Positions 1-19,359 of a stretch of 19,359 nt of DNA are shown here, in pieces. Source of the stretch: Octopus sinensis (taxonomy: Eukaryota); NCBI RefSeq assembly GCF_006345805.1, contig NW_021824281.1, forward strand, positions 1 through 19,359, in the 5' to 3' direction. Numbering within the stretch: position 1 is the first letter of the stretch; each line of letters opens with the position of its first letter. The translations under genes and the position numbers were made by a program. Under the pieces are notes generated by a model, which saw only the letters and a program-made list of their open reading frames with translations, did not search any database and had not been told where the DNA came from.

Positions 1-3000
1 ACAAACGAGCCTCGTTCACACATCATGCGTCAATTCAAACAAGCCTCGTTCACACATGCGTCCATTCAAACAAGGCTCGTTCACCCGTCATGCGTCCATA
101 CAAACAAGCCTCGTTCACACATCATGCGTCCACACAAACAAGCCTCGTTCACACATCATGCGTCCATACATACACGCCTCGTTCACACATCGTGCGTCCA
201 TTCCAACAAGCCTTGTTCACACATGTGTTCATACAAAGAAGCCTCGTTCACACATCATGCGTCTATACAAACAAGCCTCGTTCACACATCATTCGTCCAT
301 ACAAACAGGCCTCGTTCACACATCATGCGTCCATACATACACGCCTCGTTCACACATCATGCGTCCACACAAACAAGCCTCCACACATCATGCGTCCACA
401 CAAAGAAGCCTCGTTCACACATCATGCGTTCATACAAACAAGGCACGTTCACCCGTCATGCGTCCATACAAACAGGCCTCGTTCACACATCATGCGTCCA
501 TACAAACAAGCCTCGTTCACACATCATGCGTCCATACATACACGCCTCGTTCACACATCATGCGTCCACACAAACAAGCCTCGTTCACACATCATGTGTC
601 CATTCAAACAAGCCTCGTTCACACATCATGCGTCCAAACAACCAAGCCTCGTTCACACTTTATGCGTTCATACAAACAAGCCTCGTTCACACCTCATGCG
701 TTCATGCAAACAAGCCTCGTTCACCGCCATGCGTTCATACAAACAAGGCTCGTTCACCCGTCATGCGTCCATACAAACAAGCCTGGTTCATACATCATGC
801 GTCCACACAAACAAGCCTCGTTCACACATCATGCGTCCACACAAACAAGCCTCGTTCACACATCATGCGTCCATACACGCCTCGTTCACACATCATGCGT
901 CCACACAAAGAAGACTCGTTCCCACATCATGCGTTCATACAAACAGGCCTCGTTCACACATCATGCGTCCACACAAACAAGCCTCGTTCACACATCATGC
1001 GTCCATACAAACAAGCCTCGTTCACACATCATGCGTTCATACAAACAAGCCTCGTTCACACATCTTGCGTTCATACAAACAAGCCTCGTTCACACATCAT
1101 GCGTTCATACATACACGCCTCGTTCACACATCATGCGTCCATACAAACAAGCCTCGTTCACACATCATGCGTCCATACAAACAAGCCTCGTTCACACATC
1201 ATGCGTTCATACAAACAAGCCTCGTTCACACATCATGCGTCCATACAAACAAGCCTCGTTCACCCGTCATGCGTCCATACAAACAAGCCTCGTTCACACA
1301 TCATGCGTCCATACAAATATGCCACGTTCACACATCATGCGTCCATACACGCCTCGTTCACACATCATGCGTCCATACACACAAGCCTCGGTCACACATC
1401 ATACGTCCATACACGCCTCGTTCACACATCATGCGTCCACACAAAGAAGCCTCGTTCACACATCATGCGTACATTCAAACAAGCATCGTTCACATATCAT
1501 GCGTCCACACATAGAAGCCTCCTTCACACATCATGCGTCCATAGAAAGAAGCCTCGTTCACACATCATGCGTCCATACACACAAGCCTCGTTCACACATC
1601 ATGCGCCCATACACGCCTCGTTCACACACGCTTCCACACAAAGAAGCTTCGTTCATACATCATGCGTCCATTCAAACAAGCCTCGTTCACACATCATGCG
1701 TTCATACAAACAAGGCTCGTTCACCCGTCATGCGTCCATACAAATATGCCTCGTTCACACATCATGCGTTCATACAAACAAGCCTCGTTCACACATCATG
1801 CGTCCATACAAACAAGCCTCGTTCACACATCATGCGTCCATACATACACGCCTTGTTCACACATCATGCGTTCATACAAATAAGCCTCGTTCACACATCA
1901 TGCGTCCATTCAAACAAGCCTCGTTCACCGTCATGCGTTCATACAAACAAGCCTCGTTCACACATCATGCGTCCATACAAACAAGCCTCGTTCACACATC
2001 ATGCGTCCATACATACACGCCTCGTTCACACATCATGCGTTCATACAAACAAGCCTCGTTCACACATCATGCGTCCATACAAACAAGCCTCGTTCACCGT
2101 CATGCGTCCATACAAACAAGCCTCGTTCACCCGTCATGCGTTCATACAAACAGGCCTCGTTCACCCGTCATGTGTTCATATAAACAGGCCTCGTTCACAC
2201 ATCATGCGTCCATACAAACAAGCCTCGTTCACACATCATGCGTTCATACAAACAAGCCTCGTTCACCCGTCATGTGTTCATACAAACAAGCCTCGTTCAC
2301 ACATCATGCGTTCATACAAACAAGCCTCGTTCACACATCTTGCGTCCATTCAAACAAGCCTCGTTCACACATGCGTTCATACAAACAAGGCTCGTTCACC
2401 CGTCATGCGTCCATACAAACAAGCCTCGTTCACACATCATGCGTCCATACAAACAAGCTTCGTTCACACATCATGCGTCCATACAAACAGGCCTTGTTCA
2501 CACATCATGCGTTCATACAAACAAGCCTCGTTCACACATCATGCGTCCATACAAACAAGCCTCGTTCACACATCATGCGTCCATACAAACAAACCTCGTT
2601 CACACATCATGCGTCCATACAAACAAGCCTCGTTCACCGTCATGCGTTCATACAAACAAGCCTCGTTCACACATGCGTTCATACAAACAAGCCTCGTTCA
2701 CACATCATGCGTCCATACAAACAAGCCTTGTTCACACATCATGCGTCCATAAAACAAGCCTCGTTCACCGTCATGCGTTCATACAAACAAGCTCGTTCAC
2801 ACCGTCATGCGTTCATACAAACAAGCCTCGTTCACACATCATGCGTTCATACAAACAAGCCTCGTTCACACATCATGCGTCATACAAACAAGCCTCGTTC
2901 AAACATGCGTTCATACAAACAAGCCTCGTTCACACATCATGCGTCCATACAAACAGGCCTCGTTCACACATCATGCGTCCATACAAACAAGCCTCGTTCA

Positions 3001-3095
3001 CACATCATGCGTCCACACAAACAAGCCTCGTTCACACATCATGCGTCCATACACACAAGCCTCGTTCACACATGCGTCCATACATAGATGTTCAT
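1..3095. repeat. 34-bp tandem satellite, about 90 copies (consensus ACAAACAAGCCTCGTTCACACATCATGCGTCCAT), open at the window start
   Basis: Head-to-tail repetition with no spacers. Recurrent variants include CCAT/TCAT, CACAT/CCCGT, and 30-32 bp deletion units (ATACACGCC, CACATGCG, CACCGTC). The three + frame ORFs share one rotating 34-aa period, as expected when three 34-bp units make 102 nt. Confidence 0.97.
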
Positions 3096-3453
3096 ACATT
3101 CAGGGACATGTAATTCAGGGGCAGGTAATTAAGGGGCATGTAATTCAGGGGAAGGTAATCCAGGGGCAGGTAATTATGGGGAAGGTAATTGAGGGGCAGG
3201 TAACTCAGGGGCAGGTAATTCAGGTGCATGTAATTCAGGGGCATGTAATTATGGGAAAGTAATTCAGGGCAGATAATCCAGGGGCAGGTAAATCAGAGGA
3301 ATATAATTCAGGGGCAGGTAATCCAGGGTTACGTATTTCAGGGGCAGGTAATTCAAGTGCATGTAATTCAGGGTCATATAACTCCGGGGCAGGTAATTCA
3401 GGTGCATGTAACTCAGGGGCAGGTAATTCAGGTGCATGTAACTCAGGGGCAGG
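3096..3453 (+). repeat. 15-bp G-rich minisatellite, 24 units (consensus TAATTCAGGGGCAGG / TAATTCAGGTGCATG)
   Basis: Units start with TA every 15 bp, with two 14-bp units. It translates as QG(H/Q/K)VI pentapeptides in the ORF track. The last five units alternate as a 30-bp dimer. Confidence 0.95.
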
Positions 3454-3541
3454 TAAGGGTTGGGTTAGGGGTTGGGGTTGGTTGGGGTTGGGTTTGGGGT
3501 TGGGTTAGCGTTAGGGGTTTGGGGTTGGGTTAGGGTTAGGG
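3454..3541 (+). repeat. Degenerate interstitial telomeric tract (TAAGGG, TTGGG, TTGGGG, TTAGCG, TTAGGG), G-strand on +
   Basis: Read directly; it ends in canonical TTAGGGTTAGGG. TTAGGG is the telomeric repeat of vertebrates and most non-arthropod, non-nematode animals. Confidence 0.9.
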
Positions 3542-3551
3542 TAATATACTC

Positions 3552-3677
3552 TTTCACTGTGACCATGGTGGAGCACCGCCTTTAGTCAAGCAAATCAACC
3601 CCAGGAATTATTCTTTGTATGCCTATTACTTAATGTATAGGTCTCTTTTGCAGAACCGATAAGTTACGGGGACGTAA
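3552..3677 (-). mobile_element. SINE 3'-region fragment, antisense (octopus tRNA/CORE-SINE-like)
   Basis: CACTGTGACCATGGTGGAGCACCGCCTTTAGTCAAGCAAATCAACCCCAGG...AAGTTACGGGGACGTAA matches the other in-window SINE copies and my recollection of the common octopus SINE. The family name is not database-verified. Confidence 0.8.
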
Positions 3678-3914
3678 TGTTCGATATACTGATTTAGTAG
3701 GTATTTATTTATTGTAATAATTTCAATTATCATAAATTATGGGCTAGGAAAATACTAGAAACTTTTTTGATAGACCTATCGGGGCTCCATGAGTGTGTGG
3801 GACTTTTTAATTATGTGAGTGTGGGTATTTTCATTTCAGTGTTTGTGTGTGAGAGTGTTTTTATTTCTGTGTGCGCGAGTGTGTGAGCGACTGAGTGTTT
3901 CTATTTGTTTGTGT

Positions 3915-4020
3915 GTGTGCGACACTTACAACTACAACAAACACTTTGACCATTTGTAAGATACCCACATTTGAGATCACTAAATACTAAATCAAAATGA
4001 GTTCAATTTATTGCACCTTT
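3915..4020. repeat. ~105-bp dispersed module, copy 1 of 4 (others at 6211-6324, 6893-7006 and 8707-8815)
   Basis: Shared GCGACA(C/A)TTACA...AAGATACCCACATTTG...AATTTATTGC, each copy preceded by a GT-rich tract. Confidence 0.9.
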
Positions 4021-4112
4021 ATATATATACACACACACACATGTATGTGTTTGTGTATTTATATGTCGTATATAGCGTCGTATATATATATATATATATA
4101 TCTATATATATT

Positions 4113-4145
<33 letters not shown>

Positions 4146-4200
4146 GTATATATGTATATGTATGTATATATATATATGTATATATACATACAGATATACG
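4021..4200. repeat. (TA)n / (TATG)n / (CA)n compound microsatellite
   Basis: Read directly; it is the source of the Y/I-rich pseudo-ORFs. Confidence 0.95.
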
Positions 4201-4344
4201 TGAATATACCAACACACGTATATGTAGTATCTAAAAGAAAAAAGAAACTGTAAGGGATGGAATGGGAGTTCTTTCCGTTTTATTAAGAAAACTTGCATCT
4301 GTATGTGTGATAGTACGTGCGTGCATTCTCGTGTGCCCTTCGAG

Positions 4345-4474
4345 GGCGAACATACACAGACACACACACACACACACATTTAAACATATATACGACGAGA
4401 TTCTATCAGTTTCCTTCCATGAACCCGAAACCATGTGGTTCGTAAGCAAACTACTTACAACATAGCCATTCCTA
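4345..4474 (-). mobile_element. SINE 5' half (tRNA-like head plus CA/TA linker) with internal deletion, antisense
   Basis: TGAACCCGAAACCATGTGGTTCGTAAGCAAACTACTTACAACATAGCCA is the reverse complement of a head with A-box-like TGGCTATGTTG and B-box-like GGTTCA. It is joined directly to ATACGACG...CAGTTTCC. Confidence 0.75.
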
Positions 4475-4485
4475 CGTCGATATTC

Positions 4486-4643
4486 ATATATACGACGGCT
4501 TCTTTCAGTTTTCCTCTACAAACTCTACTCAGAATACATTGGTCGGCCCTAGGCTATAGTCGAATACACTTGCCGAAGATGCAACGCTGTTGGTTTGAAC
4601 TCAGCACATTGCGGTTCGTGAGCAATCATTCTCACAGAAATGC
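4486..4643 (-). mobile_element. Second SINE 5' half, antisense, more diverged
   Basis: ATACGACGGCTTCTTTCAGTTT...GGTCGGCCCTAGGCTATAGT...ACACTTGCC...TGAACTCAG aligns as the reverse complement of the + copies at 5010-5165 and 5195-5345. Confidence 0.75.
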
Positions 4644-4661
4644 GTGCACAAACAGACACAT

Positions 4662-4855
4662 AATGTCACGGTTTAAAGGTGAACATGTTTAAAACATAAA
4701 TAGCTACGAGTTTGCGTATATGCATGTCTCTATGTGCCTGGGGGCGGGCGTGTGTTTCCAGAATGTCGCAGTTTTAAGGTCAACATATTTAAAACATAAA
4801 TAGGTACGAGATTGCGTCTTTGCATGTATCTATATTCGTGGGTGCGGACGTGTGA
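4662..4855. repeat. Two-copy 100-bp direct tandem duplication
   Basis: AATGTCACGGTTTAAAGGTGAACATGTTTAAAACATAAATAG... at 4662 and AATGTCGCAGTTTTAAGGTCAACATATTTAAAACATAAATAG... at 4762. Confidence 0.9.
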
Positions 4856-5009
4856 GTGTTTGTGCGTGTGTGAGCACAGTCCACCTATACCCAAGCTGGT
4901 TGCATCGTCTCATAAGAACCAGCCGTGAAAGTTCCGGATCACATTAATGAACTCATTTGCATACAAACAATTAGGGCTCCCCTTGAACTTGTCAGGTTAA
5001 CAAACAGTA

Positions 5010-5165
5010 GTGTCTGAATGGGAATTATCTTGCTTACCTAACAAATGTTTTCGAGTTCAGTCCCACTGGGTGGCATGTTGGGCAAATGTCTTCTACTATA
5101 GTCTCGGGCCGACCAAAGCCTTGTGAGTGGATTTGGGAGACGGAAACTAAAAGAAGACTGTCGTA
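5010..5165 (+). mobile_element. SINE 5' half (tRNA-like head plus CORE-like segment), sense
   Basis: B-box-like GAGTTCAGTCCC, CORE-like TTGGGCAAATGTC, then GGCCGACCAAAGCCTTGTGAGTGGATTTGG, ending at a (TA)n linker. Confidence 0.8.
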
Positions 5166-5194
5166 TGTATATATATATATATATGTAGCAGTAA

Positions 5195-5342
5195 GAGTGG
5201 CTATGTAGCTTGCTATCCAAATACGGTGTTTCTGGTTCAGTCCAACTACGTGGCCCCATTGGCAAGTGTCTTCCAATATAGCCTCAGACAGACCAACGTT
5301 TCTGAGTAGATTTGGTACACGGAAACAGAAAGTAGCCCGTGG

Positions 5343-5345
<3 letters not shown>
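5195..5345 (+). mobile_element. Second sense SINE 5' half
   Basis: GAGTGGCTATGTAGCTTGC (A-box-like), GGTTCAGTCC (B-box-like) and TTGGCAAGTGTC (CORE-like), ending at (TA)n. Confidence 0.8.
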
Positions 5346-5424
<79 letters not shown>

Positions 5425-5468
5425 CAGGTATATATTGACAGATATATGTATATACATATAGATATTTA
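5341..5468. repeat. (TA)n(GA)n compound microsatellite / SINE linker
   Basis: Read directly; a related linker occurs at 8059-8156 and about 9745-9836. Confidence 0.9.
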
Positions 5469-5570
5469 AACATATAAGGGATGGCCATAATGGGACATCC
5501 GACTCACTAGAGAGGGCAGTTGAACTCCAAAAATCGTAAAAGTCTGTCATGTCTGAATAATATATTCGAA

Positions 5571-5770
5571 AGTTACTTCCTCTTGCTCATTATAATTTAT
5601 TAAAAGTAATATAATTGTATGTAAGGAAAGTAACTCTGGAAGATGTTATCTAGTTATCTCCCTTCCGAGAGTTAATTTCTTGCATATTTTTTTATTGTTA
5701 AATTATAATATTGAAGGGGAGTAACTGTAGAAGATACTTTGTAGTTATCTCCCTTAAGTATGTAGTTATC
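5571..5770. repeat. Cluster of imperfect palindromic motifs A(A)GGGAAGTAACT-N~14-AGTTATCTCCCT(T); possible non-autonomous DNA-transposon relic
   Basis: Full motifs at 5623-5664 and 5714-5755, with half motifs at 5571 and ~5668. The same motif occurs at 7552-7592, 8378-8560 and 9246-9286. Confidence 0.75.
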
Positions 5771-6316
5771 GTAATATACACTTTGTCGCTCTTAGACTCT
5801 CAGTTATTTCACTGTGACCATGGTGGAGCACTGCCTTTAGTGAAGCAAATCAACCCCAGGAATTATTCCTTGTATGCCTATTACTTAATGTATAGGTCTC
5901 TTTTGCAGAACCGATAAGTTACGGGGACGTAATGTTCGATGTTCTGATTTAGTAGGTATTTATTTACTGTAATAATTTCAATTATCATAAATTAAGGGGT
6001 AGGAAAAATACTAGAAACTTTTTTGATAGACCTATTGGGGCTCCTTGTGTGTGTGGGACTGATTTTATTTATGTGAGTGTGGGTATTTTCATTTCAGTGT
6101 GTGTGAGAGTGTTTTTATTTCTGTGTGCGTGAGTGTGTGAGCGACTGAGTGTTTCTATTTGTTTGTGTGTGCGAGTGTGTGAGCGACTGAGTGTTTCTAT
6201 TTGTTTGTGTGTGTGCGACACTTACAAATGCAGCAAGCACTTTGACCATTTCTAAGATACCCACATTTGAGATCACTAACTACTAAATCAAAATAAGTTC
6301 AATTTATTGCACCTTT
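5771..6316. repeat. Duplicated block A, copy 2, including an antisense SINE 3' fragment at ~5789-5932 and a 42-bp tandem duplication at 6131-6216
   Basis: Colinear with 3541-4020. Confidence 0.92.
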
Positions 6317-6485
6317 AGTGACTTGAGATGTTGCTCATATTTTTCCCATGTGTCGACAATGTATTAAGTTCACAAGTGGATAAAAGAAATTCTCATGCTC
6401 GCGTGGAGGGGGCTGATATTCTAACTGCGAGTGCAAAGGACCCAATGCCCCTTTACATTCTGAATAAATTGTATGTTTGTGCTAG

Positions 6486-6497
6486 TTAGGGTTAGGG
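6486..6497 (+). repeat. Two perfect TTAGGG units (possible telomeric stub)
   Basis: GTTAGGGTTAGGGTTT, same polarity as the two larger tracts. It sits at the boundary between unique sequence and a GT-rich tract. Confidence 0.45.
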
Positions 6498-6499
6498 TT

Positions 6500-6892
6500 T
6501 TATGTGTGAGTGTGTAACTGCGTTTTCATTTCTGTGTGTGGGTGCGTATGTGAGAGTTTGGATGTGTAACTGTCTTTTTCGTTGCTATATGTGTGTGTCT
6601 GTGTGTTTGTGCGTGTGTAGGTATGTAACTGTTTCCATTTCTGTGTTTGTCCGCGTGTTTGAGTGTGTGAATATGTAGCTATGTATTTTCATTTGTGTGT
6701 TTGTGCGTATGTGAGTGTGTGTGTGTGTGTGTGAGTATTGTTTTTCAGTGTTTGTGTACGTGGAACTGTTTTTATTTGTGTGTGTGTGAAAGTGTGTGTT
6801 GGTAGTTTCATTTCAGTGTTTGTGTTTGTGTGAATGTTTTTATTTCTGTGTGTACGTGTGTGTGAGCGACTGTGTTTTTATTCGTTTGTGTG
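6500..6892. repeat. Degenerate GT-rich low-complexity minisatellite (recurring GTAACTG / TTTCATTTC(A)GTGTG words)
   Basis: Read directly; related tracts at ~3805-3915, 6060-6215 and 8570-8710. Confidence 0.8.
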
Positions 6893-7053
6893 TGTGCGAC
6901 AATTACAGCTACAACAAACACTTTAAGCATCTCCAAGATACCCACATTTGCAGATCCCTAAGTTCTAAATGAAAAGAAGTTAAATTTATTGCACCTTTAG
7001 TGACTTCAGATTTGCGAGTGTTAAGCACGCAATGCCTCCCGTATCTACATACC

Positions 7054-7278
7054 TGGATTGGCCATAATTGGCCTCATTCGGAGATCTCTCGGGTGTGGAA
7101 TATTTATAACTATAGAAGTTAACTTGTTACAGGTTTTGTTTATGGCTTAACTTTTGTAGATTTTGGGAAGTTCATAGATCTTACTGGCTTTGCAGTGAAA
7201 TCTAGTCAAGCAATTTGTCTCCTTTTTTGTTAAATCGTGTTGGAACTGGTGAATAAGAGTAGACAGTTTGGTTATTAC
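7054..7278 (-). pseudogene. Degenerate Penelope-like element (PLE) reverse-transcriptase N-terminal fragment
   Basis: Manual translation: VITKLSTLIHQFQHDLTKKETNCLTRFHCKASKIYELPKIYKS*AINKTCNKLTSIVINIPHPRDLRMRPIMANP (75 codons, one stop at 7149-7147). It matches the PLE pattern LTxKExxxL...FYGLPKIHKS...PxDLKLRPIVAGP as I recall it, including the spacing. Recognised by eye; no HMM was run. Confidence 0.75.
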
Positions 7279-7295
7279 CTTCGAACGACTGTAGC

Positions 7296-7408
7296 TGTTT
7301 TACTCCCTGTATTTTAGCTGTTCGGCAAATGAGAATAAGTTAGAATAAATACTAGGCTTACAAAGAAGTGCTGCGGACGATGTGATGGACTAAAGGCGGC
7401 GCTCCAGT
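7296..7408 (+). mobile_element. SINE 3'-region fragment, sense (paralog at ~8989-9110)
   Basis: TAGCTGTTCGGCAAA...TACTAGGCTTACAAAG...GACTAAAGGCGGCGCTCCAG is the reverse complement of the antisense fragments. It truncates the PLE fragment. Confidence 0.75.
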
Positions 7409-7551
7409 ATTTATATATATACATATATACTTACAGATATACGTGTCTATACCCACATACGCATATATACTATATAAAACAAAAAAGAAATTTGATTATG
7501 TCATTATTACTTTATTACAGATATTACAACATGAAACGTATTATATGACGT

Positions 7552-7592
7552 TAGGGAAGTAACTCTAGGAGATATTTTTTGCTATCTCCCTA
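7552..7592. repeat. Single palindromic motif TAGGGAAGTAAC...GCTATCTCCCTA, starting inside a literal TTAGGG (paralog at 9246-9286)
   Basis: Same motif family as 5571-5770 and 8374-8564. Confidence 0.7.
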
Positions 7593-7616
7593 GTGAAGAG
7601 GTCATGGACTTTTCTC

Positions 7617-7929
7617 GTTATTTACTCTTTTACTCTCATTTACTTGTTTCAGTCATGTGACTGTGGCCACGTTGGAGCACGACCTTTAGTCGAGCATATC
7701 GACCCAGGACTTATTCATTGTAGGCCTAGTCTCTTTCGCTGAACCTCTAAGTTATGGGGACGTTGACAGACTAGCATCCGTTGTGTAGCAATGTTTGGGG
7801 ACAAACAGACATACGCACACACACATACACACGTGCACATATATATAAACATATATATGACTGCATTTTTCCAGTTTCCTTCCACCATATCCAATCACAA
7901 GGCTTTGGTCGGCTCGGGGCTATAGTAGA
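7617..7929 (-). mobile_element. Headless SINE (3' tail, body, linker and part of the 5' region), antisense (paralog at 9311-9617)
   Basis: TTTACTCTTTTACTC tail, CAGTCATGTGACTGTGGCC...GGAGCAC, CA/TA linker, then CACAAGGCTTTGGTCGGCTCGGGGCTATAGTAGA. Confidence 0.85.
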
Positions 7930-7939
7930 TTTTTCAAAA

Positions 7940-8046
7940 GATGCTGGTGTGTTTTCCTCCCTGTATTTCAGCGGTTCGGCAGAAAAGAATAAGTTAGAAT
8001 GAATACTAGGCTTAGAAAGAATAAGTGCTGCTGACGATGTGCTCGA
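7940..8046 (+). mobile_element. SINE 3'-region fragment, sense, abutting the antisense copy (paralog at 9628-9735)
   Basis: GATGCTGGTGTGTTT...AGCGGTTCGGCAG...TACTAGGCTTAGAAAGAATAAG...TGCTCGA. Confidence 0.75.
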
Positions 8047-8058
8047 AGAAGATAGATT

Positions 8059-8098
<40 letters not shown>

Positions 8099-8373
8099 GA
8101 GAGAGACAGATCTATATATATAGAGAGAGAAACATGTATATACATATAGATATTTATATTTATGTATATGTGTGTATGTTTCGGTGTCCCTAAAACCGGT
8201 TGACAACCGATGCCGGTGTTTTTTACACTCCATTAACTTATCCGTTCGGGAAAAGAAGACCAACAGAATATATACTAGACTGACGTAAACAAAAGTCCTA
8301 GTGTCGATTTGCTGAAGAAAAGGATGTGCATGGGCACAGTGAAATGACTAAACCAGGATAAGAGTAAAAGTAA
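8059..8373 (+). mobile_element. SINE linker plus 3' half with AGAGTAAAAGTAAA tail, sense
   Basis: (TA)n(GA)n linker, TTGACAACCGATGCCGGTG, GTCGATTTGCT, CAGTGAAATGACT, then the tail GATAAGAGTAAAAGTAAA. Confidence 0.75.
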
Positions 8374-8564
8374 ATGTAAGGGAAGTAACTGCAAGATTTT
8401 GTAGTTATCTCCCTTTCTAGTAACTCTACAAAGAAAGATAACTCCAAAATCTTTCAGAGTTACCTCCCTCACATATACTGATAATTGTTAAATATACTAG
8501 GCAAGAGAAGTAACTCTAGAAAAGGAGATAATTACAAAATCTTCCAGAGTTACTTCCCTTACAT
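8374..8564. mobile_element. ~190-bp MITE-like element with ~47-bp terminal inverted repeats built from the palindromic motif
   Basis: ATGTAAGGGAAGTAACTGCAAGATTTTGTAGTTATCTCCCTTTCTAG (8374-8420) is the inverted counterpart of CTAGAAAAGGAGATAATTACAAAATCTTCCAGAGTTACTTCCCTTACAT (8516-8564). A third copy lies internally at ~8430-8469. No unambiguous target-site duplication. Confidence 0.65.
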
Positions 8565-8569
8565 GTATC

Positions 8570-9780
8570 TGTTTGTGTACGTAAAACTGTTTTTATTTGT
8601 GTGTGTGTGTGTCGGTAGTTTCATTTCAGTGTTTGTGTTTGTGTGATTGTTTTTATTTCTGTGTGTATGTTTGTGGGAGCCTATGTGCGGTTTTTTTCGC
8701 TTGTGTGTGTGCGACAATTACAGCTACAACAAACACTTTGAGCATCTCCAAGATACCCACATTTGCAGATCACTAGCTTCTAAATGAAAAGAAGTTCAAT
8801 TTATTGCGACTTCAGATTTGCGATTGTTAAGCACCCAATGCTCCCTGTATCTACATACCTAGTACTGACTTTGCAGTGAAATCTAGTCAAGCAATTTGTC
8901 TCTTTTTTTGTTAAATCGTGTTGGAACTGGTGGATAAGCCTAGACAGTTTGGTCATTATATTCGATTGACTGTAGTTGTTCATGTTTTAACCGATGTTTT
9001 ACTCCCTGTATTTTAGCGGTTCGGCAAAAGAGAACAAGTTAGAATAAATACTATGCTTACAACAAATAAGTGCTGCGGACGATGTTCTCGACTAAAGGCG
9101 GCGCTCCAGTATTTATATATATATATATATTTACATAGATATACGTGTATATACCCACATACGCATATAAAACAAAAAAGAAACTTTGATTATGTCATTA
9201 TTACTTTATTACAGATATTACAACATGAAACGTATTATATGACGTTAGGGAAGTAACTCTAGGAGATATTTTCTGCTATCTCCCTAGTGAACAGGTCATA
9301 GACTTTTCTCGTTATTTACTCTTTTACTCTCATTTACTTGTTTCAGTCATTTGACTGTGGGCATGTTGCAGCACCACCTTCAGCCGAGCATATCGACCCC
9401 AGGACTTATTCTTTGTAGGCCTAGTACTTATTTTTTCAGTCTCTTTCGCTGAACCTCTAAGTTATGGGGAGGTAAACAGACTAGCATCCATTGTGTAGCA
9501 ATGTTTGGGGACAAAGACACACGCACACATATATAAACATATACATGACTGGAGTTTTCCAGATTCCTTCCACCATATCCAATCACAAGGCTTTGGTTGG
9601 CTCGGGGCTATAGTAGATTTTTCAAACGATGCTGGTGTGTTTTCCTCCCTGTATTTCAGCGGCTCGGCAGAAAAGAATAAGTTAGAATAAATACTAGGCT
9701 TAGAAAGAATAAGTGCTGCTGACGATGTGCTCGAAGGTAGATTGGTATATATAATATATATATTTATAAAGATATATCAG

Positions 9781-9811
<31 letters not shown>

Positions 9812-9975
9812 CATGTATATACATATAGACATTTATATATATGTATATGTGTGTATATTTCTGTGTCTCCAAAACCGCTTGACAACAAATGCCGGTGTTT
9901 TTTACACTCCATTAACTTATCCGTTCGGGAAAAGAAGACCAACAGAATTAATACTAGACTGACGTAGATAAGAGT
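8570..9975. repeat. Duplicated block B, copy 2
   Basis: Colinear with 6749-8365. It lacks ~126 bp (about 7055-7180) of the PLE fragment and 69 bp (8288-8356) near its end. Confidence 0.93.
8864..8980 (-). pseudogene. Truncated paralog of the PLE RT fragment
   Basis: ORF-track peptide TKLSRLIHQFQHDLTKKETNCLTRFHCK; the LPKI...RPI part is deleted. Confidence 0.65.
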
Positions 9976-10300
9976 TAGGGTTAGGGTTGGGTTAGGGTTA
10001 GGGTTAGGGTTGGGTTAGGGTTAGGGTTAGGTTGGTTAGGGTTAGGGTTAGGGTTAGGGTTAGGGTTTGGGGTTGGGTTAGGGTTGGGGTTGGGTTAGGG
10101 TTAGGGTTGGTTAGGTTAGGGTTAGGGTTAGGGTTGGTTAGGTTAGGGTTGGGGTTAGGGTTAGGGTTAGGGTTGGGGTTGGGTTAGGGTTGGGTTAGGG
10201 TTAGGGTTAGGGTTGGGGTTAGGGTTAGGGTTTGGGTTAGGGTCAGGGTCAGGGTCAGGGTTAGGGTTAGGGTTAGGGTTAGGGTTGGGTTAGGGTTAGG
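9975..10300 (+). repeat. Interstitial telomeric tract of ~326 bp, mostly TTAGGG with TTGGG, TTGGGG, TTAGG and TTGG variants and three TCAGGG (10243-10260)
   Basis: Read directly. Confidence 0.97.
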
Positions 10301-13300
10301 TGCGCTCGTAGGTACATCAGAACAAGGTATATACCTAGTAAATCTGTAGCTTGTGCAGAGTCCGGTGCTCCCGTAGGTACATCAGAACAAGGTAAATACC
10401 TAGTAAGTCTGTACCTTGTGCAGAGTCCGGTGCTCCCGTAGATACATCAGAAAAAGGTAAATACCTAGTAAGACTTTAGATTGTGCAGAATCCAGTGCTC
10501 TCGTAGGTACATCAGGACAATTTAAATACCTAGTAAGTCTGTAGCTTGTGCAGAATCCGCTGCTCCCGTAGGTACATCAGAGCAAGGTAAATACCTAGTC
10601 AGTCTGTATCTTGTGCAGAAACCGTTGTTCCCTTAGGTACATCAGAACAAGGTAAATACCTAGTCAGTCTGTATCTTGTGCAGAGTCCGGTTCCCCCGTA
10701 TGTACATCAGAACAAGGTAAATAGCTAGTAAGTCTGTAGCTTGTGCAGAATCCGGTGCTCCCGAAGGTACATCAGAACCAGGTAAATACCTAGTAAGTCT
10801 GTAGCTTATGCACAATCCGGTGCTCCCGTAGGTACATCTGAACAAGGTAAATACCTAGTAAGTCTGTAGCTTGTGCAGAAACCGGTGCTCCCGTAGGTAC
10901 ATCAGAACAAGGTAAATACCTAGTAAGTCTGTACCTTGTGCAGAGTCCGGTGCTCCCGTAGGTACATCAGAAAAAGGTAAATACCTAGTAAGTCTGTAGC
11001 TTGTGCAGAATCCGGTGCTCTCGTAGGTACATCAGAACAAGGTAAATACCTAGTAAGTCTGTAGCTTGTGCAGAATCCGGTGCTCCCGTAGGTACATCAG
11101 AACAAGGTAAATACCTAGTAAGTCTGTAGCTTGTGCAGAATCCGGTGTTCCCGTAGGTACATCAGAGCAAGATAAATACCTAGTCAGTCTGTAGCTTGTG
11201 CACAATCCGGTGCTCCCGTAGGTACATCAGAACAAGGTAAATACCTAGTAAGTCTGTAGCTTGTGCAGAGTCTGGTGCTCCCGTAGGTACATCAGAACAA
11301 GGTAAATACCTCGTAAGACTTTAGCTTGTGCAGAATCCGGTGCTCCTGTAGGTACATCAGAACAAGGTAAATACCTTGTAAGTCTGTAGCTTGTGCAGAA
11401 TCCGGTGCTCCCGTATGTACATCAGACCAAGGTAAATACCTAGTAAGTCTGTAGCTTGTGCACAATCCGGTGCTCCCGTAGGTACATCAGAACAAGGTAA
11501 ATACCTAGTAAGTCTGTAGCTTGTGCAGAGACAGGAGTTCCCGTAGGTACATCAGAACAAGGTAAATACCTAGTAAGTCTCTAGCTTGTGCAGAATCCGG
11601 TGCTCCCGTAGGTACATCAGAACAAGGTAAATACCTAGTAAGTCTGTAGCTTGTGCAGAGACCGGTGCTCCCGTAGGTACATCAGAACAGGTAAATACCT
11701 GTAAGTCTGTAGCTTTTGCAGAGACAGGAGTTCCCGTAGGTACATCAGACAAGGTAAATACCTAGTAAGTCTGTAGCTTTTGCAGAGACAGGAGATCCCG
11801 TAGGTACATCAGAACAAGGTAAATACCTAGTAAGTCTGTAGCTTGTGCAGAATCCGGTGCTCCCGTAGGTACATCAGAACAAGGTAAATACCTAGTAAGT
11901 CTGTAGCTTGTGCAGAATCCGGTGTTCCCGTAGGTACATCAGAGCAAGGTAAATACCTAGTCAGTCTGTATCTTGTGCAGAGTCCGGTGCTCCCGTAGGT
12001 ACATCAGAGCAAGGTAAATACCTAGTCAGTCTGTATCATGTGCAGAGTCCGGTGCTCCCGTATGTACATCAGAACAAGGTAAATAGCTAGTAAGTCTGTA
12101 GCTTGTGCAGAGTCCGGTGCTCCCGTAGGTACATCAGAACAAGGTAAATACCTAGTAAGTCTGTAGCTTGTGCAGAGTCCGGTGCTCCCGTAGGTACATC
12201 AGAACAAGGTAAAAACCTAGTAAGTCTGTAGCTTGTGCAGAATCCGGTGTTCCCGTCGGTACATCAGAGCAAGGTAAATACCTAGTCAGTCTGTATCTTG
12301 TGCAGAGTCCGGTGCTCCCGTAGGTACACCAGAGCAAGATAAATACCTAGTAAGTCTGTAGCTTTTGCAGAATCCGGTGCTCCCGTAGGTACATCAGAAC
12401 AAGGTAAATACCTAGTAAGTCTGTAGCTTGTGCAGATTCCGGTACTCCCGTAGGTAAATCAGAACAAGGTAAAAACCTAGTAAGTCTGTAGCTTGTGCAG
12501 AGACCGGTGCTCCCGTAGGTACATTAGAACAAGGTAAATACCTAGTAAGTCTGTAGCTTGTGCAGAGACCGGTGCTCCCGTAGGTACATCAGAACAAGGT
12601 AAATACCTTGTAAGTCTGTAGCTTGTGCAGAGTCCGGTGCCCCCATAGGTACATCAGAACAAGGTAAATAACTAGTAAGTCTGTACCTTGTGCAGAGTCC
12701 AGTGCTCCCGTAGGTATATCAGAAAAAGGTTAATACCTAGTAAGTATTTAGCTTGTGCAGAGTCCGATGCTCCCGTAGGTACATCAGAACAAGGTAAATA
12801 CCTAGAAAATTTGTACCTAGTGCAGAGTCCGGTGCTCCCGTAGGTACATCAGAAAAAGGTAAATACCTAGTAAGTCTTTAGCTTGTGCAGAATCCGGTGC
12901 TATCGTAGGTACATCAGAACAAGGTAAATACCTGGTGAGTCTGTAGCTTGTGCAGAATCCGCTGCTCCCGTAGGTACATCAGAACAAGGTAAATACCTTG
13001 TAAGTCTGTAGCTTGTGCAGAGTCCGGTGCTCCCGTATGTACATCAGAACAAGGTAAAAACCTAGTAAGTCTGTAGCTTGTGCAGAATCCGGTGTTCCCT
13101 TCGGTACATCAGAGCAAGGTAAATACCTTGTAAGTCTGTAGCTTGTGCAGAGTCTGGTGCTCCAGTAGGTACAGCAGAACTAGGTAAATACCCAGTAAGT
13201 CTAGCTTGTGCAGAGTCTGGTGCTCCAGTAGGTACAGCAGAACTAGGTAAATACCCAGTAAGTCTGTAGCTTTTGCAGAGACAGGAGATCCCGTAGGGAC

Positions 13301-19300: not shown

Positions 19301-19359
19301 GTCTGTAACTTGTGCAGAGTCCGGTGCCCCGTAGGTACATCAGAACAAGGTAATACCTA
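10301..19359. repeat. 65-bp tandem satellite, about 139 copies (consensus GGTGCTCCCGTAGGTACATCAGAACAAGGTAAATACCTAGTAAGTCTGTAGCTTGTGCAGA(A/G)TCC), open at the window end
   Basis: Period confirmed by eye (GGTAAATACC at 11041 and 11106). Head-to-tail with no spacers; recurrent diagnostic variants. Confidence 0.98.

What the first reader, a model, noticed from the sequence alone, without database searches (positions are those of the whole stretch)
5571..9286. Palindromic AGGGAAGTAACT-N~14-AGTTATCTCCCT motif sits beside SINE tails and where telomeric tracts substitute
Seen: the motif occurs at 5571-5770, 7552-7592, 8374-8564 and 9246-9286, and each occurrence is within ~10-35 bp of a SINE 3' tail (three independent loci plus one duplicate). 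In both duplicated blocks, the copy without the motif cluster has a telomeric tract in its place, with the junction ~10-16 bp from where a full motif would be. The left arm begins TAAGGG or TTAGGG. Established: programmed breakage followed by telomere addition is directed by short motifs in Tetrahymena (Cbs) and by a degenerate palindrome in the nematode Oscheius tipulae (SFE). Inference, speculative: the motif marks a breakage, targeting or recombination site. More conservatively, it is a hairpin-forming MITE that is fragile and attracts SINE insertions. No such system is known to me in molluscs.
Basis: partly seen in the sequence, partly recalled or inferred. Interest (0 to 1): 0.75.

Follow-up and report, generated by a model that had tools for sequence, protein, structure and literature searches.

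The report
Foldback repeat in a subtelomere-like mosaic
A short hairpin-forming repeat really does sit beside SINE tails and at the edges of duplicated blocks in DNA studded with telomere repeats, but it looks like an old foldback or MITE-like repeat at break-prone patch boundaries, not a programmed chromosome-breakage signal.

Summary
The motif is real. Seven paired copies lie at the four stated loci (three independent), against none in 300 shuffles. It is part of a homologous repeat unit of about 55-60 bp ("U") whose spacer is also conserved. The two clusters share a 150-bp U-spacer-U segment, and cluster 2 is a strong foldback.

All three independent SINE copies that keep a 3' tail abut a U unit within 0-23 bp (random placement P <= 1e-6).

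The "telomere in its place" claim holds by position only. The two junctions have opposite polarity. At 9974/9975 a G-strand tract starts inside a SINE tail, as in telomere healing. At 3540/3541 the distal end of a G-strand tract is joined to a SINE 3' end. That is the wrong orientation for healing of that block.

All three telomeric tracts point the same way and lie at patch boundaries. This resembles human-type subtelomeres.

Best reading: an old foldback or MITE-like repeat in a subtelomere-like mosaic, whose edges are nick- or break-prone. A Cbs/SFE-like programmed breakage signal is not supported and fails the testable SFE criteria.

No other copy of this genome could be reached, so genome-wide tests remain undone.

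The parts
5571..5770 (+). U cluster 1. It holds an inverted arm at 5571-5583, spacer, unit U (5619-5675), spacer, unit U (5710-5766), and a third arm AGTTATC (5764-5770) truncated at the block A boundary.
   Evidence: Folds at -25.3 kcal/mol, z -4.5. 5619-5769 aligns with cluster 2 in reverse over about 150 bp.
7548..7604 (+). Solo U unit (arms at 7553-7564 and 7581-7591).
   Evidence: nhmmer E 1.8e-16. Weak hairpin at -4.5 kcal/mol, z -1.4. No indel of 6 bp or more within 75 bp since the duplication.
8371..8567 (+). U cluster 2, a foldback: U forward (8374-8430), U reverse (8415-8474), spacer, U reverse (8509-8564). Terminal inverted repeat 8371-8390 / 8548-8567.
   Evidence: Inverted repeats of 20 nt at 95% and 32 nt at 91% and 84%. 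Folds at -41.8 kcal/mol, z -8.9. nhmmer hits.
9242..9300 (+). Solo U unit, the duplicate of 7548-7604 (96% identical).
5771..5930 (-). SINE-like 3' part (copy A2). Its 3' end (rc ...GTATATTAC) abuts the truncated third U arm at 5770/5771.
   Evidence: blastn to the fullest copy, query positions 178-329. Alignment.
3541..3675 (-). SINE-like 3' part (copy A1). The same 3' end GTAATATAC is joined to the distal end of telomeric tract 1.
7606..7940 (-). SINE-like copy L2, 5'-truncated, with a GTAA/GAGTAAAA-type tail. The tail ends about 14-23 bp from the solo U. Its duplicate is at 9287-9626.
   Evidence: A possible target-site duplication GAAAARTC (7/8) is weak.
8143..8373 (+). SINE-like 3' half L3. 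Its tail ...GATAAGAGTAAAAGTAAA runs directly into cluster 2.
9822..9974 (+). Duplicate of L3 (copy B2). It lacks 69 bp of SINE body and is cut in the tail at ...GATAAGAG, followed by (TTAGGG)n.
3457..3542 (+). Telomeric tract 1: degenerate, with TTGGGG/TTAGGG variants, G-strand on +. It lies between the 15-bp satellite and block A1.
6486..6499 (+). Telomeric tract 2 (TTAGGGTTAGGGTT), G-strand on +, between module M2 and the GT-rich minisatellite of M3.
   Evidence: (exact 12-mer; chance expectation 0.12).
9975..10300 (+). Telomeric tract 3, about 55 repeats at 88% matches, G-strand on +, between the cut SINE tail and the 65-bp satellite.
3552..4021 (+). Block A copy 1. It matches 5807-6317 at 93-95%, and homology extends left to 3541/5771. 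It is shorter on the right than copy 2.
6749..8365 (+). Tandem unit 1, matching unit 2 at 8571-9974 (92.9% in ungapped columns). Cluster 2 sits exactly between the two units.

Best explanation
The motif is the core of an old, non-coding, dispersed inverted-repeat family, which I call U.

ANATOMY
- The unit is about 55-60 bp. Read by eye from the alignment, its consensus is ATGTAAGGGAAGTAACTCTGGAAGATTTTGTAGTTATCTCCCTTTCTAGAGTTACTTCTCTT.
- The ancestral element had at least U-spacer-U (about 150 bp).
- It is foldback or MITE-like.

CONTEXT
- It lies in a subtelomere-like mosaic of duplicated patches. These patches are separated by telomeric tracts that all point the same way.

MECHANISM (INFERRED)
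- The AT-rich, hairpin-prone U clusters are places where nicks or breaks occur or persist.
- The free 3' ends there prime reverse transcription of the GTAA-tailed SINE. This is why SINE 3' ends abut U.
- Occasionally those ends become duplication junctions (5770/5771, 8567/8571) or are healed by telomerase (9974/9975).
- The 3540/3541 junction is of a different kind. A block that ends exactly at a SINE 3' terminus was attached to the distal end of an existing G-strand tract. This is the orientation expected for telomere-primed reverse transcription or end capture.

WHAT IS SHOWN AND WHAT IS NOT
- Shown: the repeat family, its foldback structure, its adjacency to SINE 3' ends, the breakpoint positions and the polarity of the telomeric tracts.
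- Inferred: fragility, the direction of causation, and the subtelomeric location.
For: - Motif and unit statistics.
- The spacer between the arms is conserved, and unit identities are 59-84% with positional correspondence between clusters (c1_u1 to c2_u3 at 84%).
- A 150-bp homology links the two clusters in inverted orientation.
- Cluster 2 folds at -41.8 kcal/mol (z -8.9) and cluster 1 at -25.3 (z -4.5).
- No coding signal.
- All three tail-bearing SINE copies lie within 0-23 bp of U, with different spacers and both U orientations. Random placement gives P <= 1e-6.
- Homology breakpoints: A1/A2 ends at 5770/5771 inside a third U arm. Unit 2 starts 3 bp after the cluster 2 inverted repeat. 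Unit 2 ends 9-14 bp before the cluster-equivalent position.
- All telomeric matches are on the + strand.
- Literature. Inverted repeats that form hairpins or cruciforms trigger chromosome rearrangements (PMC10164571). Degenerate TTAGGG-like blocks occur in subtelomeres, and interstitial telomeric sequences (ITSs) are often flanked by mobile elements and satellites (PMC6410037). ITSs lie at boundaries of subtelomeric repeat elements in humans (PMC4032850). L1 can insert at unprotected telomeres without its endonuclease (PMC4700185). Octopus genomes are rich in SINEs, LINEs, TIR elements and MITEs (PMC13282606).
Against: - There are only three independent U loci and three breakpoints, all in one window.
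- No target-site duplication could be shown for U, so transposition is unproven.
- The solo U is a weak hairpin, yet it also has a SINE 3' end beside it. It shows no indel since the duplication. Structure-driven fragility therefore does not explain all cases.
- SINE tails are simple repeats that are themselves unstable (27-bp and 69-bp deletions). They are confounded with U in every case.
- The set B junction position depends on accepting a 69-bp deletion.
- The subtelomeric location and the species are not verified.
- Genome-wide copy number is unknown, because every external search failed.
Confidence: 0.45

Rival explanations
1. The SINE 3' tail is the hub and U is passive. U is a small DNA transposon or MITE that inserts preferentially in or next to GTAA/A-rich SINE tails. 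The tails are unstable simple repeats, and they are where deletions, duplication boundaries and telomere junctions fall. U is then only a bystander at those junctions.
For: - Every junction of interest is in or at a SINE tail: 3540/3541, 5770/5771, 8373/8374 and 9974/9975.
- Tails carry 27-bp and 69-bp deletions.
- The A1/A2 homology ends exactly at the SINE terminus, so set A adds nothing independent of the SINE-U adjacency.
- Cluster 2 has a 20-nt, 95% terminal inverted repeat that ends in TA on both sides.
- Tc1-Mariner, PiggyBac and MITE families are recorded in Octopus vulgaris.
Against: - At 5770/5771 the SINE or block boundary truncates a U arm, so U was there first.
- The solo U is 14-23 bp beyond the tail, not inside it.
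- No convincing target-site duplication flanks U.
- The unit 2 start at 8571 is at the far edge of cluster 2, not in a SINE tail.
Confidence: 0.25
2. U is a cis-acting signal for programmed (developmental) or otherwise directed chromosome breakage with de novo telomere addition. It would be analogous to Tetrahymena Cbs or the Oscheius tipulae SFE.
For: - It has palindromic architecture.
- Its context is rich in telomere tracts and satellites.
- One healing-type junction (9974/9975) maps 9-14 bp from where cluster 2 would be.
- Two further homology breakpoints lie at cluster edges.
- Units start with a telomere-like TAAGGG or TTAGGG.
Against: - In set A the tract has the wrong polarity for healing of block A (and sequence).
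- Only 1 of 3 proximal telomere junctions is near a U-equivalent site.
- The telomere is not added inside the motif at a telomere-matching triplet, as in SFE.
- The arms are 12 nt, separated by a conserved 12-16-nt spacer, rather than a 29-bp palindrome with a 3-bp centre.
- Units are 59-84% identical and share flanking spacers, which is typical of a decaying repeat.
- The telomeric tracts are interstitial in one assembled molecule and 5-25% degenerate, so they are old germline features, not somatic ends.
- TTAGGG occurs in only 1 of 6 independent units.
Confidence: 0.04
3. The loci are not independent. SINE-plus-U is an old composite that spread by segmental duplication within this repeat-rich region. 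The adjacency was then created once and inherited.
For: The whole core is built from recurring modules: four copies of module M, repeated SINE fragments, and repeated microsatellite-flank pieces such as 4164-4247, 7407-7490 and 9109-9190.
Against: - The sequence between tail and U differs in length and content: 0, 14 and about 23 bp, with no similarity.
- U has the opposite orientation relative to the SINE at 8374.
- The SINE bodies are only 61-73% alike.
- Flanks beyond U are unrelated.
Confidence: 0.1
4. This is small-sample coincidence or assembly artefact. The mosaic may be partly a mis-assembly of repeat-rich long reads, and the apparent regularities may be post hoc.
For: - Indel noise rises to 2.7 per 65-bp unit in the last kilobase, which suggests poorly polished long-read consensus.
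- The junction calls rest on 9-mers.
- The pattern was noticed before it was tested.
Against: - The duplicated copies differ by 5-13% with many indels, so they are not assembly duplicates.
- The core region shows no such noise.
- The U-SINE proximity gives P <= 1e-6.
- All three telomeric tracts share one orientation.
Confidence: 0.1

Closest known systems
MITEs and foldback-type transposable elements (for example Drosophila FB, or chromosome-breaking double-Ds in maize; named from established knowledge, not fetched)
   Same: U is short and non-coding. It has terminal and subterminal inverted repeats built from a reiterated short unit. It forms a strong single-strand foldback, occurs at several loci, and lies next to rearrangement breakpoints.
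   Different: No target-site duplication, autonomous partner or genome-wide copy number could be shown. Only 3 loci were seen, and unit divergence is high (59-84% identity).
Fragile inverted repeats and palindromes (yeast Alu-IR and hairpin-capped breaks; PMC10164571, PMC10622511)
   Same: Closely spaced inverted repeats with a predicted stable hairpin (cluster 2) lie next to a duplication junction and near a telomere-healed end.
   Different: The arms here are short (20-50 bp) and imperfect. Fragility is inferred from three breakpoints and was not measured. The duplications are direct, not the inverted duplications typical of foldback priming.
Subtelomeric internal telomere-like islands at duplicon or SRE boundaries (human; PMC4032850, PMC6410037)
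   Same: Degenerate TTAGGG-like tracts, all in one orientation, separate duplicated low-copy blocks and satellites.
   Different: A chromosome-end location is not verified here. Two of the five patch boundaries carry a U cluster instead of a telomeric tract.
Oscheius tipulae SFE (PMC13060919; bioRxiv 10.1101/2022.08.19.504554)
   Same: Both are degenerate palindromes in a subtelomere-like context, with a telomere-matching triplet in the arm (GGG here, GGC/GCC there).
   Different: SFE is 29 bp with a 3-bp centre. The break is at its centre and the telomere is primed on the conserved triplet inside the motif. SFE has been shown necessary and sufficient. Here the arms are separated by a conserved 12-16-nt spacer, the one healing-type junction lies 9-14 bp outside the motif, and there are no functional data.
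Tetrahymena Cbs (15-bp chromosome breakage sequence; from established knowledge)
   Same: In Tetrahymena, telomere addition occurs a few to some tens of bp from the element rather than inside it. That matches the 9-14 bp offset at 9974/9975.
   Different: Cbs is a nearly invariant, non-palindromic 15-mer. It is lost together with its flanks, and telomeres are added on both sides. Here the units are variable and retained, and the second junction has the wrong polarity.
Retroelement attachment to chromosome ends (endonuclease-independent L1 at dysfunctional telomeres; HeT-A/TART; PMC4700185)
   Same: At 3540/3541 a retroelement 3' terminus is joined to the 3' end of a G-strand tract. The element points with its tail towards the older sequence, and the copy is truncated at its far (5') side.
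   Different: The attached block contains about 350 bp of non-SINE sequence, so a read-through template or a DNA-level capture is needed. This is a single case, and no reverse-transcriptase source was identified.

Membership tests
Oscheius tipulae SFE-type breakage motif | A 29-bp degenerate palindrome with conserved GGC/GCC flanking a 3-bp centre. | tested here: not met
   The arms are 12 nt, separated by a conserved 12-16-nt spacer. SFE definition from PMC13060919.
Oscheius tipulae SFE-type breakage motif | The telomere is added inside the motif, directly on the telomere-matching triplet. | tested here: not met
   The junction ...GATAAGAG|TTAGGG maps 9-14 bp (alternatively about 77 bp) outside the unit.
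Oscheius tipulae SFE-type breakage motif | Germline DNA is intact and somatic DNA is broken at the motif; the motif is necessary and sufficient. | not testable with these tools
   There is a single assembled window, with no reads and no tissues.
Tetrahymena Cbs-type breakage sequence | A nearly invariant short sequence at every break site. | tested here: not met
   Units are 59-84% identical, and arm variants include AGGAAAGTAACT, AGGGGAGTAACT and AGGGAGGTAACT.
Tetrahymena Cbs-type breakage sequence | New telomeres are added on both sides within tens of bp, each capping its own fragment. | tested here: not met
   The junction at 9974/9975 fits. The one at 3540/3541 is G-strand running into block A, where capping would need the C-strand.
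MITE | Terminal inverted repeats. | tested here: met
   Cluster 2: 8371-8390 against 8548-8567, 20 nt at 95%, plus a 32-nt subterminal inverted repeat at 91%.
MITE | Target-site duplication flanking the element. | tested here: inconclusive
   By reading, only 2-bp candidates (TA, AT, GT) appear at the alternative boundaries. None exceeds chance.
MITE | Short, non-coding, with many dispersed copies that share ends. | tested here: inconclusive
   About 45-200 bp, with no Pfam hit. Three independent loci share a 150-bp segment. Genome-wide copy number is untestable.
Foldback element | Long inverted arms made of reiterated short subrepeats, giving a strong intrastrand fold. | tested here: met
   Cluster 2 has U forward, U reverse and U reverse, and folds at -41.8 kcal/mol, z -8.9. 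Cluster 1 folds at -25.3, z -4.5.
Subtelomeric duplicon mosaic with internal telomere-like islands | Degenerate telomere-like tracts, in one orientation, at boundaries of duplicated blocks. | tested here: met
   There are three tracts, all + strand. They lie at 3457-3542, 6486-6499 and 9975-10300, next to blocks A1, M3 and unit 2.
Subtelomeric duplicon mosaic with internal telomere-like islands | Physical proximity to a chromosome end. | not testable with these tools
   The window has no terminal tract. Both ends are satellites.
Telomere-primed or endonuclease-independent retro-insertion | The retroelement 3' end is joined to the 3' end of the G-strand, and the copy is 5'-truncated. | tested here: met
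   TTAGG|GTAATATAC (SINE 3' end, reverse strand) at 3540/3541. A1 stops at 4021 where A2, M3 and M4 continue.
Telomere-primed or endonuclease-independent retro-insertion | The inserted segment corresponds to a retroelement RNA. | tested here: inconclusive
   The block is 135 bp of SINE plus about 350 bp of non-SINE sequence shared with A2. It needs a read-through template.
tRNA-derived SINE (label used for the neighbouring repeat) | A tRNA-like head with pol III boxes. | tested here: not met
   ARAGORN finds 0 tRNAs. There is no Rfam tRNA hit at E <= 1. Box B with up to 1 mismatch gives 0 hits. The copies are old, and the family is defined only by at least 6 head and at least 8 3'-half fragments.

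The most novel reading that the evidence does not exclude
U clusters are cis-acting sites of recurrent, directed chromosome breakage in a cephalopod. New sequence, either telomere repeats or retro-copied modules anchored by a SINE tail, would be added to the broken end. U and telomeric tracts would then be interchangeable 'end marks' in a layered chromosome end (order: tract 1, cluster 1, tract 2, cluster 2, tract 3). This would be the first motif-directed breakage and healing system in molluscs.
Probability: 0.04. Interest if true: 0.85.

Novelty: new member of a known kind. Interest (0 to 1): 0.27.

Why it matters
If the ordinary reading holds, this is one more inverted-repeat element in a repeat-rich, subtelomere-like region. 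It is mainly useful for repeat annotation.

It also serves as a worked example of a general point. The polarity of an interstitial telomeric tract tells which neighbour was healed and which was captured.

Two things would be worth a genome-wide look. The first is the tight coupling of this repeat to SINE 3' ends, which could reveal the target preference of the LINE machinery that moves the very abundant octopod SINEs. The second is a SINE 3' terminus joined to the far end of a telomeric tract, which would be evidence for retroelement capture at chromosome ends in a mollusc.

Only if telomere-clipped somatic reads mapped to U would it bear on programmed DNA elimination.

Tried and rejected
1. 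Scans of public collections for the motif (metagenome, prokaryote genome and viral contigs) gave 65 loci. None has the full motif or the SINE, so they are chance matches.
2. I tried to reach other copies of the same genome through spurious ORFs. A SINE-head ORF gave 1 word-sharing candidate and no hit.
3. Two SINE core patterns searched in viral contigs gave 0 hits.
4. A literature search for the sequences themselves returned only unrelated primer matches.
5. Rfam found only sub-threshold microRNA-like hits on microsatellites and on the foldback, with no hammerhead or tRNA. ARAGORN found nothing.
6. Pfam on the ten longest core ORFs found nothing.
7. I tested whether 5465-5575, left of cluster 1, is a diverged SINE 3' half, which would have been a fourth tail. 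Alignment scores equalled the shuffles, so I rejected it.
8. I tested whether the solo U is specially conserved between the tandem units. It lies inside a broader 95-100% stretch, so it carries no specific signal.
9. A resemblance of TATCTCCCTTTCTAG to the piggyBac end, and TAA...TTA as a PIF/Harbinger target duplication, were both considered. I dropped them: the GGG...CCC polarity is opposite to piggyBac, and TAA/TTA is not a direct repeat.
10. I considered whether clusters 1 and 2 are the terminal inverted repeats of one 3-kb element. They are inverted relative to each other, but with two clusters that is a 50% prior and the interior is junk. I did not pursue it.

Full report
WHAT THE WINDOW IS

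The window is eukaryotic, repeat-dominated DNA. Its layout, is:
- 1-3084: a 34-bp satellite.
- 3098-3456: a 15-bp satellite.
- 3457-3542: a degenerate telomeric tract.
- 3543-9974: a 6.4-kb core of interspersed-repeat fragments, microsatellites and duplicated blocks.
- 9975-10300: about 55 TTAGGG-type repeats.
- 10299-19359: a 65-bp satellite.

No ORF of the core has a Pfam match. ARAGORN finds no tRNA, Rfam has no tRNA or SINE hit, and a box B consensus is absent. Within the window the family is defined by at least 6 head fragments and at least 8 3'-half fragments in both orientations, several of them 5'-truncated. Its 3' tail is of the type GAGTAAAA/GTAAA.

Yes, for the motif.
- AGGGAAGTAACT with up to 2 mismatches occurs 18 times against 1.8 expected. 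Four of those hits are chance matches in the 65-bp satellite.
- The paired form occurs at seven sites, all inside the four stated intervals. None appears in 300 shuffles.

Aligning the units shows more than a palindrome. The 12-16 nt between the arms (CTCTGGAAGAT..TTTTGT) is conserved. So are a few bases upstream (ATGTAAGGG) and a third arm downstream (TTCTAGAGTTACTTCTCTT). A profile built from them finds exactly seven units and no diverged extras: 5619-5675, 5710-5766, 7548-7604, 8374-8430, 8415-8474(-), 8509-8564(-) and 9242-9300. The last is the duplicate of 7548-7604 (96%).

Independent units are 59-84% identical. Cluster 1 (5619-5769) aligns with the reverse complement of cluster 2 (8565-8421) over about 150 bp as U-spacer-U, with unit-by-unit correspondence. 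This is a repeat family by descent, not merely a recurring binding site.

"Palindromic" holds mainly at cluster level.
- Single units fold weakly as DNA, at -4 to -9.6 kcal/mol and z -1.1 to -5.2. The solo unit does not use the two arms in its best fold.
- Cluster 2 is a strong foldback at -41.8 kcal/mol, z -8.9. It has a 20-nt, 95% terminal inverted repeat and 32-nt subterminal ones.
- Cluster 1 is intermediate at -25.3, z -4.5.
- "Left arm begins TAAGGG or TTAGGG" is true for 4 of 6 independent units, and TTAGGG occurs only in the solo unit. One near-match to a hexamer is not evidence of a telomere relationship.

PROXIMITY TO SINE TAILS

Three independent SINE copies in the core keep a 3' tail. 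Each ends beside a U unit.
- At 5770/5771 the tail end (reverse strand ...GTATATTAC) abuts a truncated third arm, AGTTATC. That is 14-16 bp from the full hairpin.
- At about 7606-7616 the tail ends 14-23 bp from the solo unit.
- At 8373/8374 the tail ...GAGTAAAAGTAAA runs straight into cluster 2.

The intervening sequences are unrelated. U is in the opposite orientation at 8374, and the SINE bodies are only 61-73% alike. I therefore treat the three as independent. Random placement of three U loci in the non-duplicated core puts all three within 35 bp outside distinct SINE 3' ends about once in 10^6 trials. The association is real in this window. Whether it holds genome-wide is unknown.

"TELOMERIC TRACTS SUBSTITUTE"

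By position this is correct, with caveats.

Set A.
- Homology between 3541-4021 and 5771-6317 (93-95%) starts at the shared 9-mer GTAATATAC. This is the SINE 3' terminus on the reverse strand.
- A1 has a 27-bp deletion in the tail relative to A2.
- To the left, A2 has cluster 1 and A1 has the telomeric tract.

Set B.
- Tandem units 6749-8365 and 8571-9974 are 92.9% identical in ungapped columns, with eight indels of 6 bp or more.
- Unit 2 ends ...GACGTA-GATAAGAG|TTAGGG.
- GATAAGAGT matches 8357-8365 of unit 1 at 9/9 if unit 2 carries a 69-bp deletion. That places the junction 9-14 bp before cluster 2.
- A gap-free alignment (6/9) would place it about 77 bp away.
- Indels are frequent here, and a chance 9/9 match is unlikely. 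I estimate roughly 20:1 in favour of the near position, but it is not certain.
- Unit 2 begins at 8571, 3 bp after the terminal inverted repeat of cluster 2. Cluster 2 therefore sits exactly at the tandem-duplication junction.

All telomeric matches are TTAGGG on the + strand. A G-strand runs 5' to 3' towards a chromosome terminus. For each tract, then, the sequence on its left is what the telomere was added to, and the sequence on its right was joined onto a pre-existing telomere afterwards.
- The junction at 9974/9975 (SINE tail, then TTAGGG) is a healing-type junction.
- The junction at 3540/3541 is the opposite kind. The tract belongs to the 15-bp satellite on its left, and block A was attached to its distal end. 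A telomere capping a fragment that begins with block A would read CCCTAA on the + strand.
- Set A is therefore not an instance of telomere addition at a break next to the motif.
- Of the three proximal junctions (3456/3457 in the 15-bp satellite, 6485/6486 in module M2, 9974/9975 in a SINE tail), only one is near a U-equivalent position.

What the 3540/3541 junction does show is a block that ends exactly at a SINE 3' terminus. It is joined tail-first to the 3' end of a G-strand tract, and it is truncated at its other side (A1 stops at 4021 where A2 and the related modules continue). This is the geometry of retroelement attachment to chromosome ends, as with endonuclease-independent L1 at unprotected telomeres and HeT-A/TART (PMC4700185). 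It would need a read-through template, because about 350 bp of the block is not SINE. A DNA-level capture cannot be excluded.

THE LARGER PICTURE

The order along the core is: tract 1 | SINE + module M1 ... | cluster 1 | SINE + M2 | tract 2 | M3 ... solo U, SINEs | cluster 2 | M4 ... solo U, SINEs | tract 3 | satellite.

Same-orientation degenerate telomere-like islands at the boundaries of duplicated low-copy blocks and satellites are the known architecture of subtelomeres (PMC6410037; PMC4032850). The one unusual feature is that two of the five patch boundaries carry a U cluster rather than a telomeric tract.

Three homology breakpoints lie within 0-16 bp of cluster edges: 5770/5771, 8567/8571 and the 9974-equivalent position. 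Of roughly 6-8 scorable breakpoints, that is more than the 2-3% expected per breakpoint. However, all but one of them are also at SINE tails, and SINE tails are unstable simple repeats in their own right.

MOST LIKELY MECHANISM (CONFIDENCE ABOUT 0.45)

U is an old foldback or MITE-like repeat. Its clusters are nick- or break-prone, as closely spaced inverted repeats are known to be (PMC10164571). Free 3' ends there serve as primers for the GTAA-tailed SINE, so SINE 3' ends pile up beside U. At 8373/8374 the tail merges with U's own GTAA. Occasionally the ends become duplication junctions or are healed by telomerase.
- Shown: the family, its structure, the adjacency, the breakpoints and the polarity.
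- Inferred: fragility, the direction of causation and the subtelomeric location.
- At 5770/5771 the junction cuts a U arm, so U pre-dates that junction.
- Against a purely structural explanation: the solo unit is a poor hairpin, yet it has a SINE end beside it. It shows no indel within 75 bp since the duplication.

RIVALS
- The SINE tail is the hub and U merely inserts there (0.25).
- An inherited SINE-U composite (0.10).
- Coincidence or assembly artefact (0.10). Indel noise at the right end of the window shows imperfect polishing, but the duplicates differ by 5-13%, so they are not assembly duplicates.
- A programmed breakage signal (0.04).

COMPARISON WITH KNOWN BREAKAGE SIGNALS

The SFE of Oscheius tipulae is a 29-bp degenerate palindrome with a 3-bp centre. 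The break is at its centre, and the telomere is primed on the conserved GGC/GCC inside the motif. It has been shown necessary and sufficient (PMC13060919). U fails the two testable criteria, architecture and addition site.

From established knowledge, Tetrahymena Cbs is a nearly invariant 15-mer with telomeres added on both sides within tens of bp. The 9-14 bp offset fits, but the variability of U and the wrong polarity in set A do not. "Works like" cannot be excluded for a single junction, but membership is not supported.

LIMITS

I could not reach any other sequence from this genome.
- Pattern scans of metagenome, prokaryote and viral collections gave only chance matches.
- The protein collection holds no ORFs from these repeats.
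- The literature search found neither the sequences nor any description of telomere-associated repeats in octopods.

Noticed in passing
window 10299-19359: In the 65-bp satellite (139.6 copies), indels per unit rise from 0.3 or less to 0.9 (17299-18298) and 2.7 (18299-19298), while mismatches stay at about 3 per unit. This looks like poorly polished long-read consensus at a contig end. A variant unit (GGTGCGCTCG...GGTATATACC) recurs at 10299, about 16268 and about 18937, which hints at higher-order periodicity.
   Followed up: partly
window 1-3084 and 3098-3456: There are two further satellites: a 34-bp unit ACAAACAAGCCTCGTTCACACATCATGCGTCCAT (92 copies) and a 15-bp unit ATTCAGGGGCAGGTA (24 copies). 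The first produces a spurious 1020-aa ORF. The 15-bp array is the sequence onto which telomeric tract 1 was added (junction 3456/3457).
   Followed up: no
window 3815-4021, 6073-6334, 6792-7015, 8604-8830: Four copies (82-93% identical) of a module made of a GT-rich minisatellite of about 26-68 bp plus CGACAATTACAGCTACAACAAACACTTT...ATTGCACCTTT. Its left side is bounded by a telomeric tract or a U cluster in all four cases, directly for two and through a SINE fragment for the other two. Its nature is unknown.
   Followed up: partly
window 3540/3541: A SINE 3' terminus is joined to the distal end of a G-strand telomeric tract, and the copy is truncated at its far side. This is the geometry expected for telomere-primed reverse transcription or end capture.
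   Followed up: partly
window 4249-4268 and 5477-5500: A shared short piece, TAAGGGATGG..AATGGGA, follows directly after microsatellites at two places. It starts with the same TAAGGGA as U but is otherwise unrelated to it.
   Followed up: no
window 7056-7182: A 125-bp segment is present in tandem unit 1 and absent from unit 2. There are eight indels of 6 bp or more in 1.4 kb between the units, so length changes are frequent in this region.
   Followed up: yes
window 4662-4854: A 100-bp tandem duplication (1.9 copies, 83% identical) in otherwise unannotated sequence.
   Followed up: no
window 4164-4247, 7407-7490, 9109-9190: A repeated piece (...ACAGATATACGTG.ATATACC.ACA.ACG.ATAT...AAAAAAGAAA) follows (TA)n microsatellites. 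In the tandem units it lies 60 bp left of the solo U. This shows that even the flanks are built from recurring modules.
   Followed up: no
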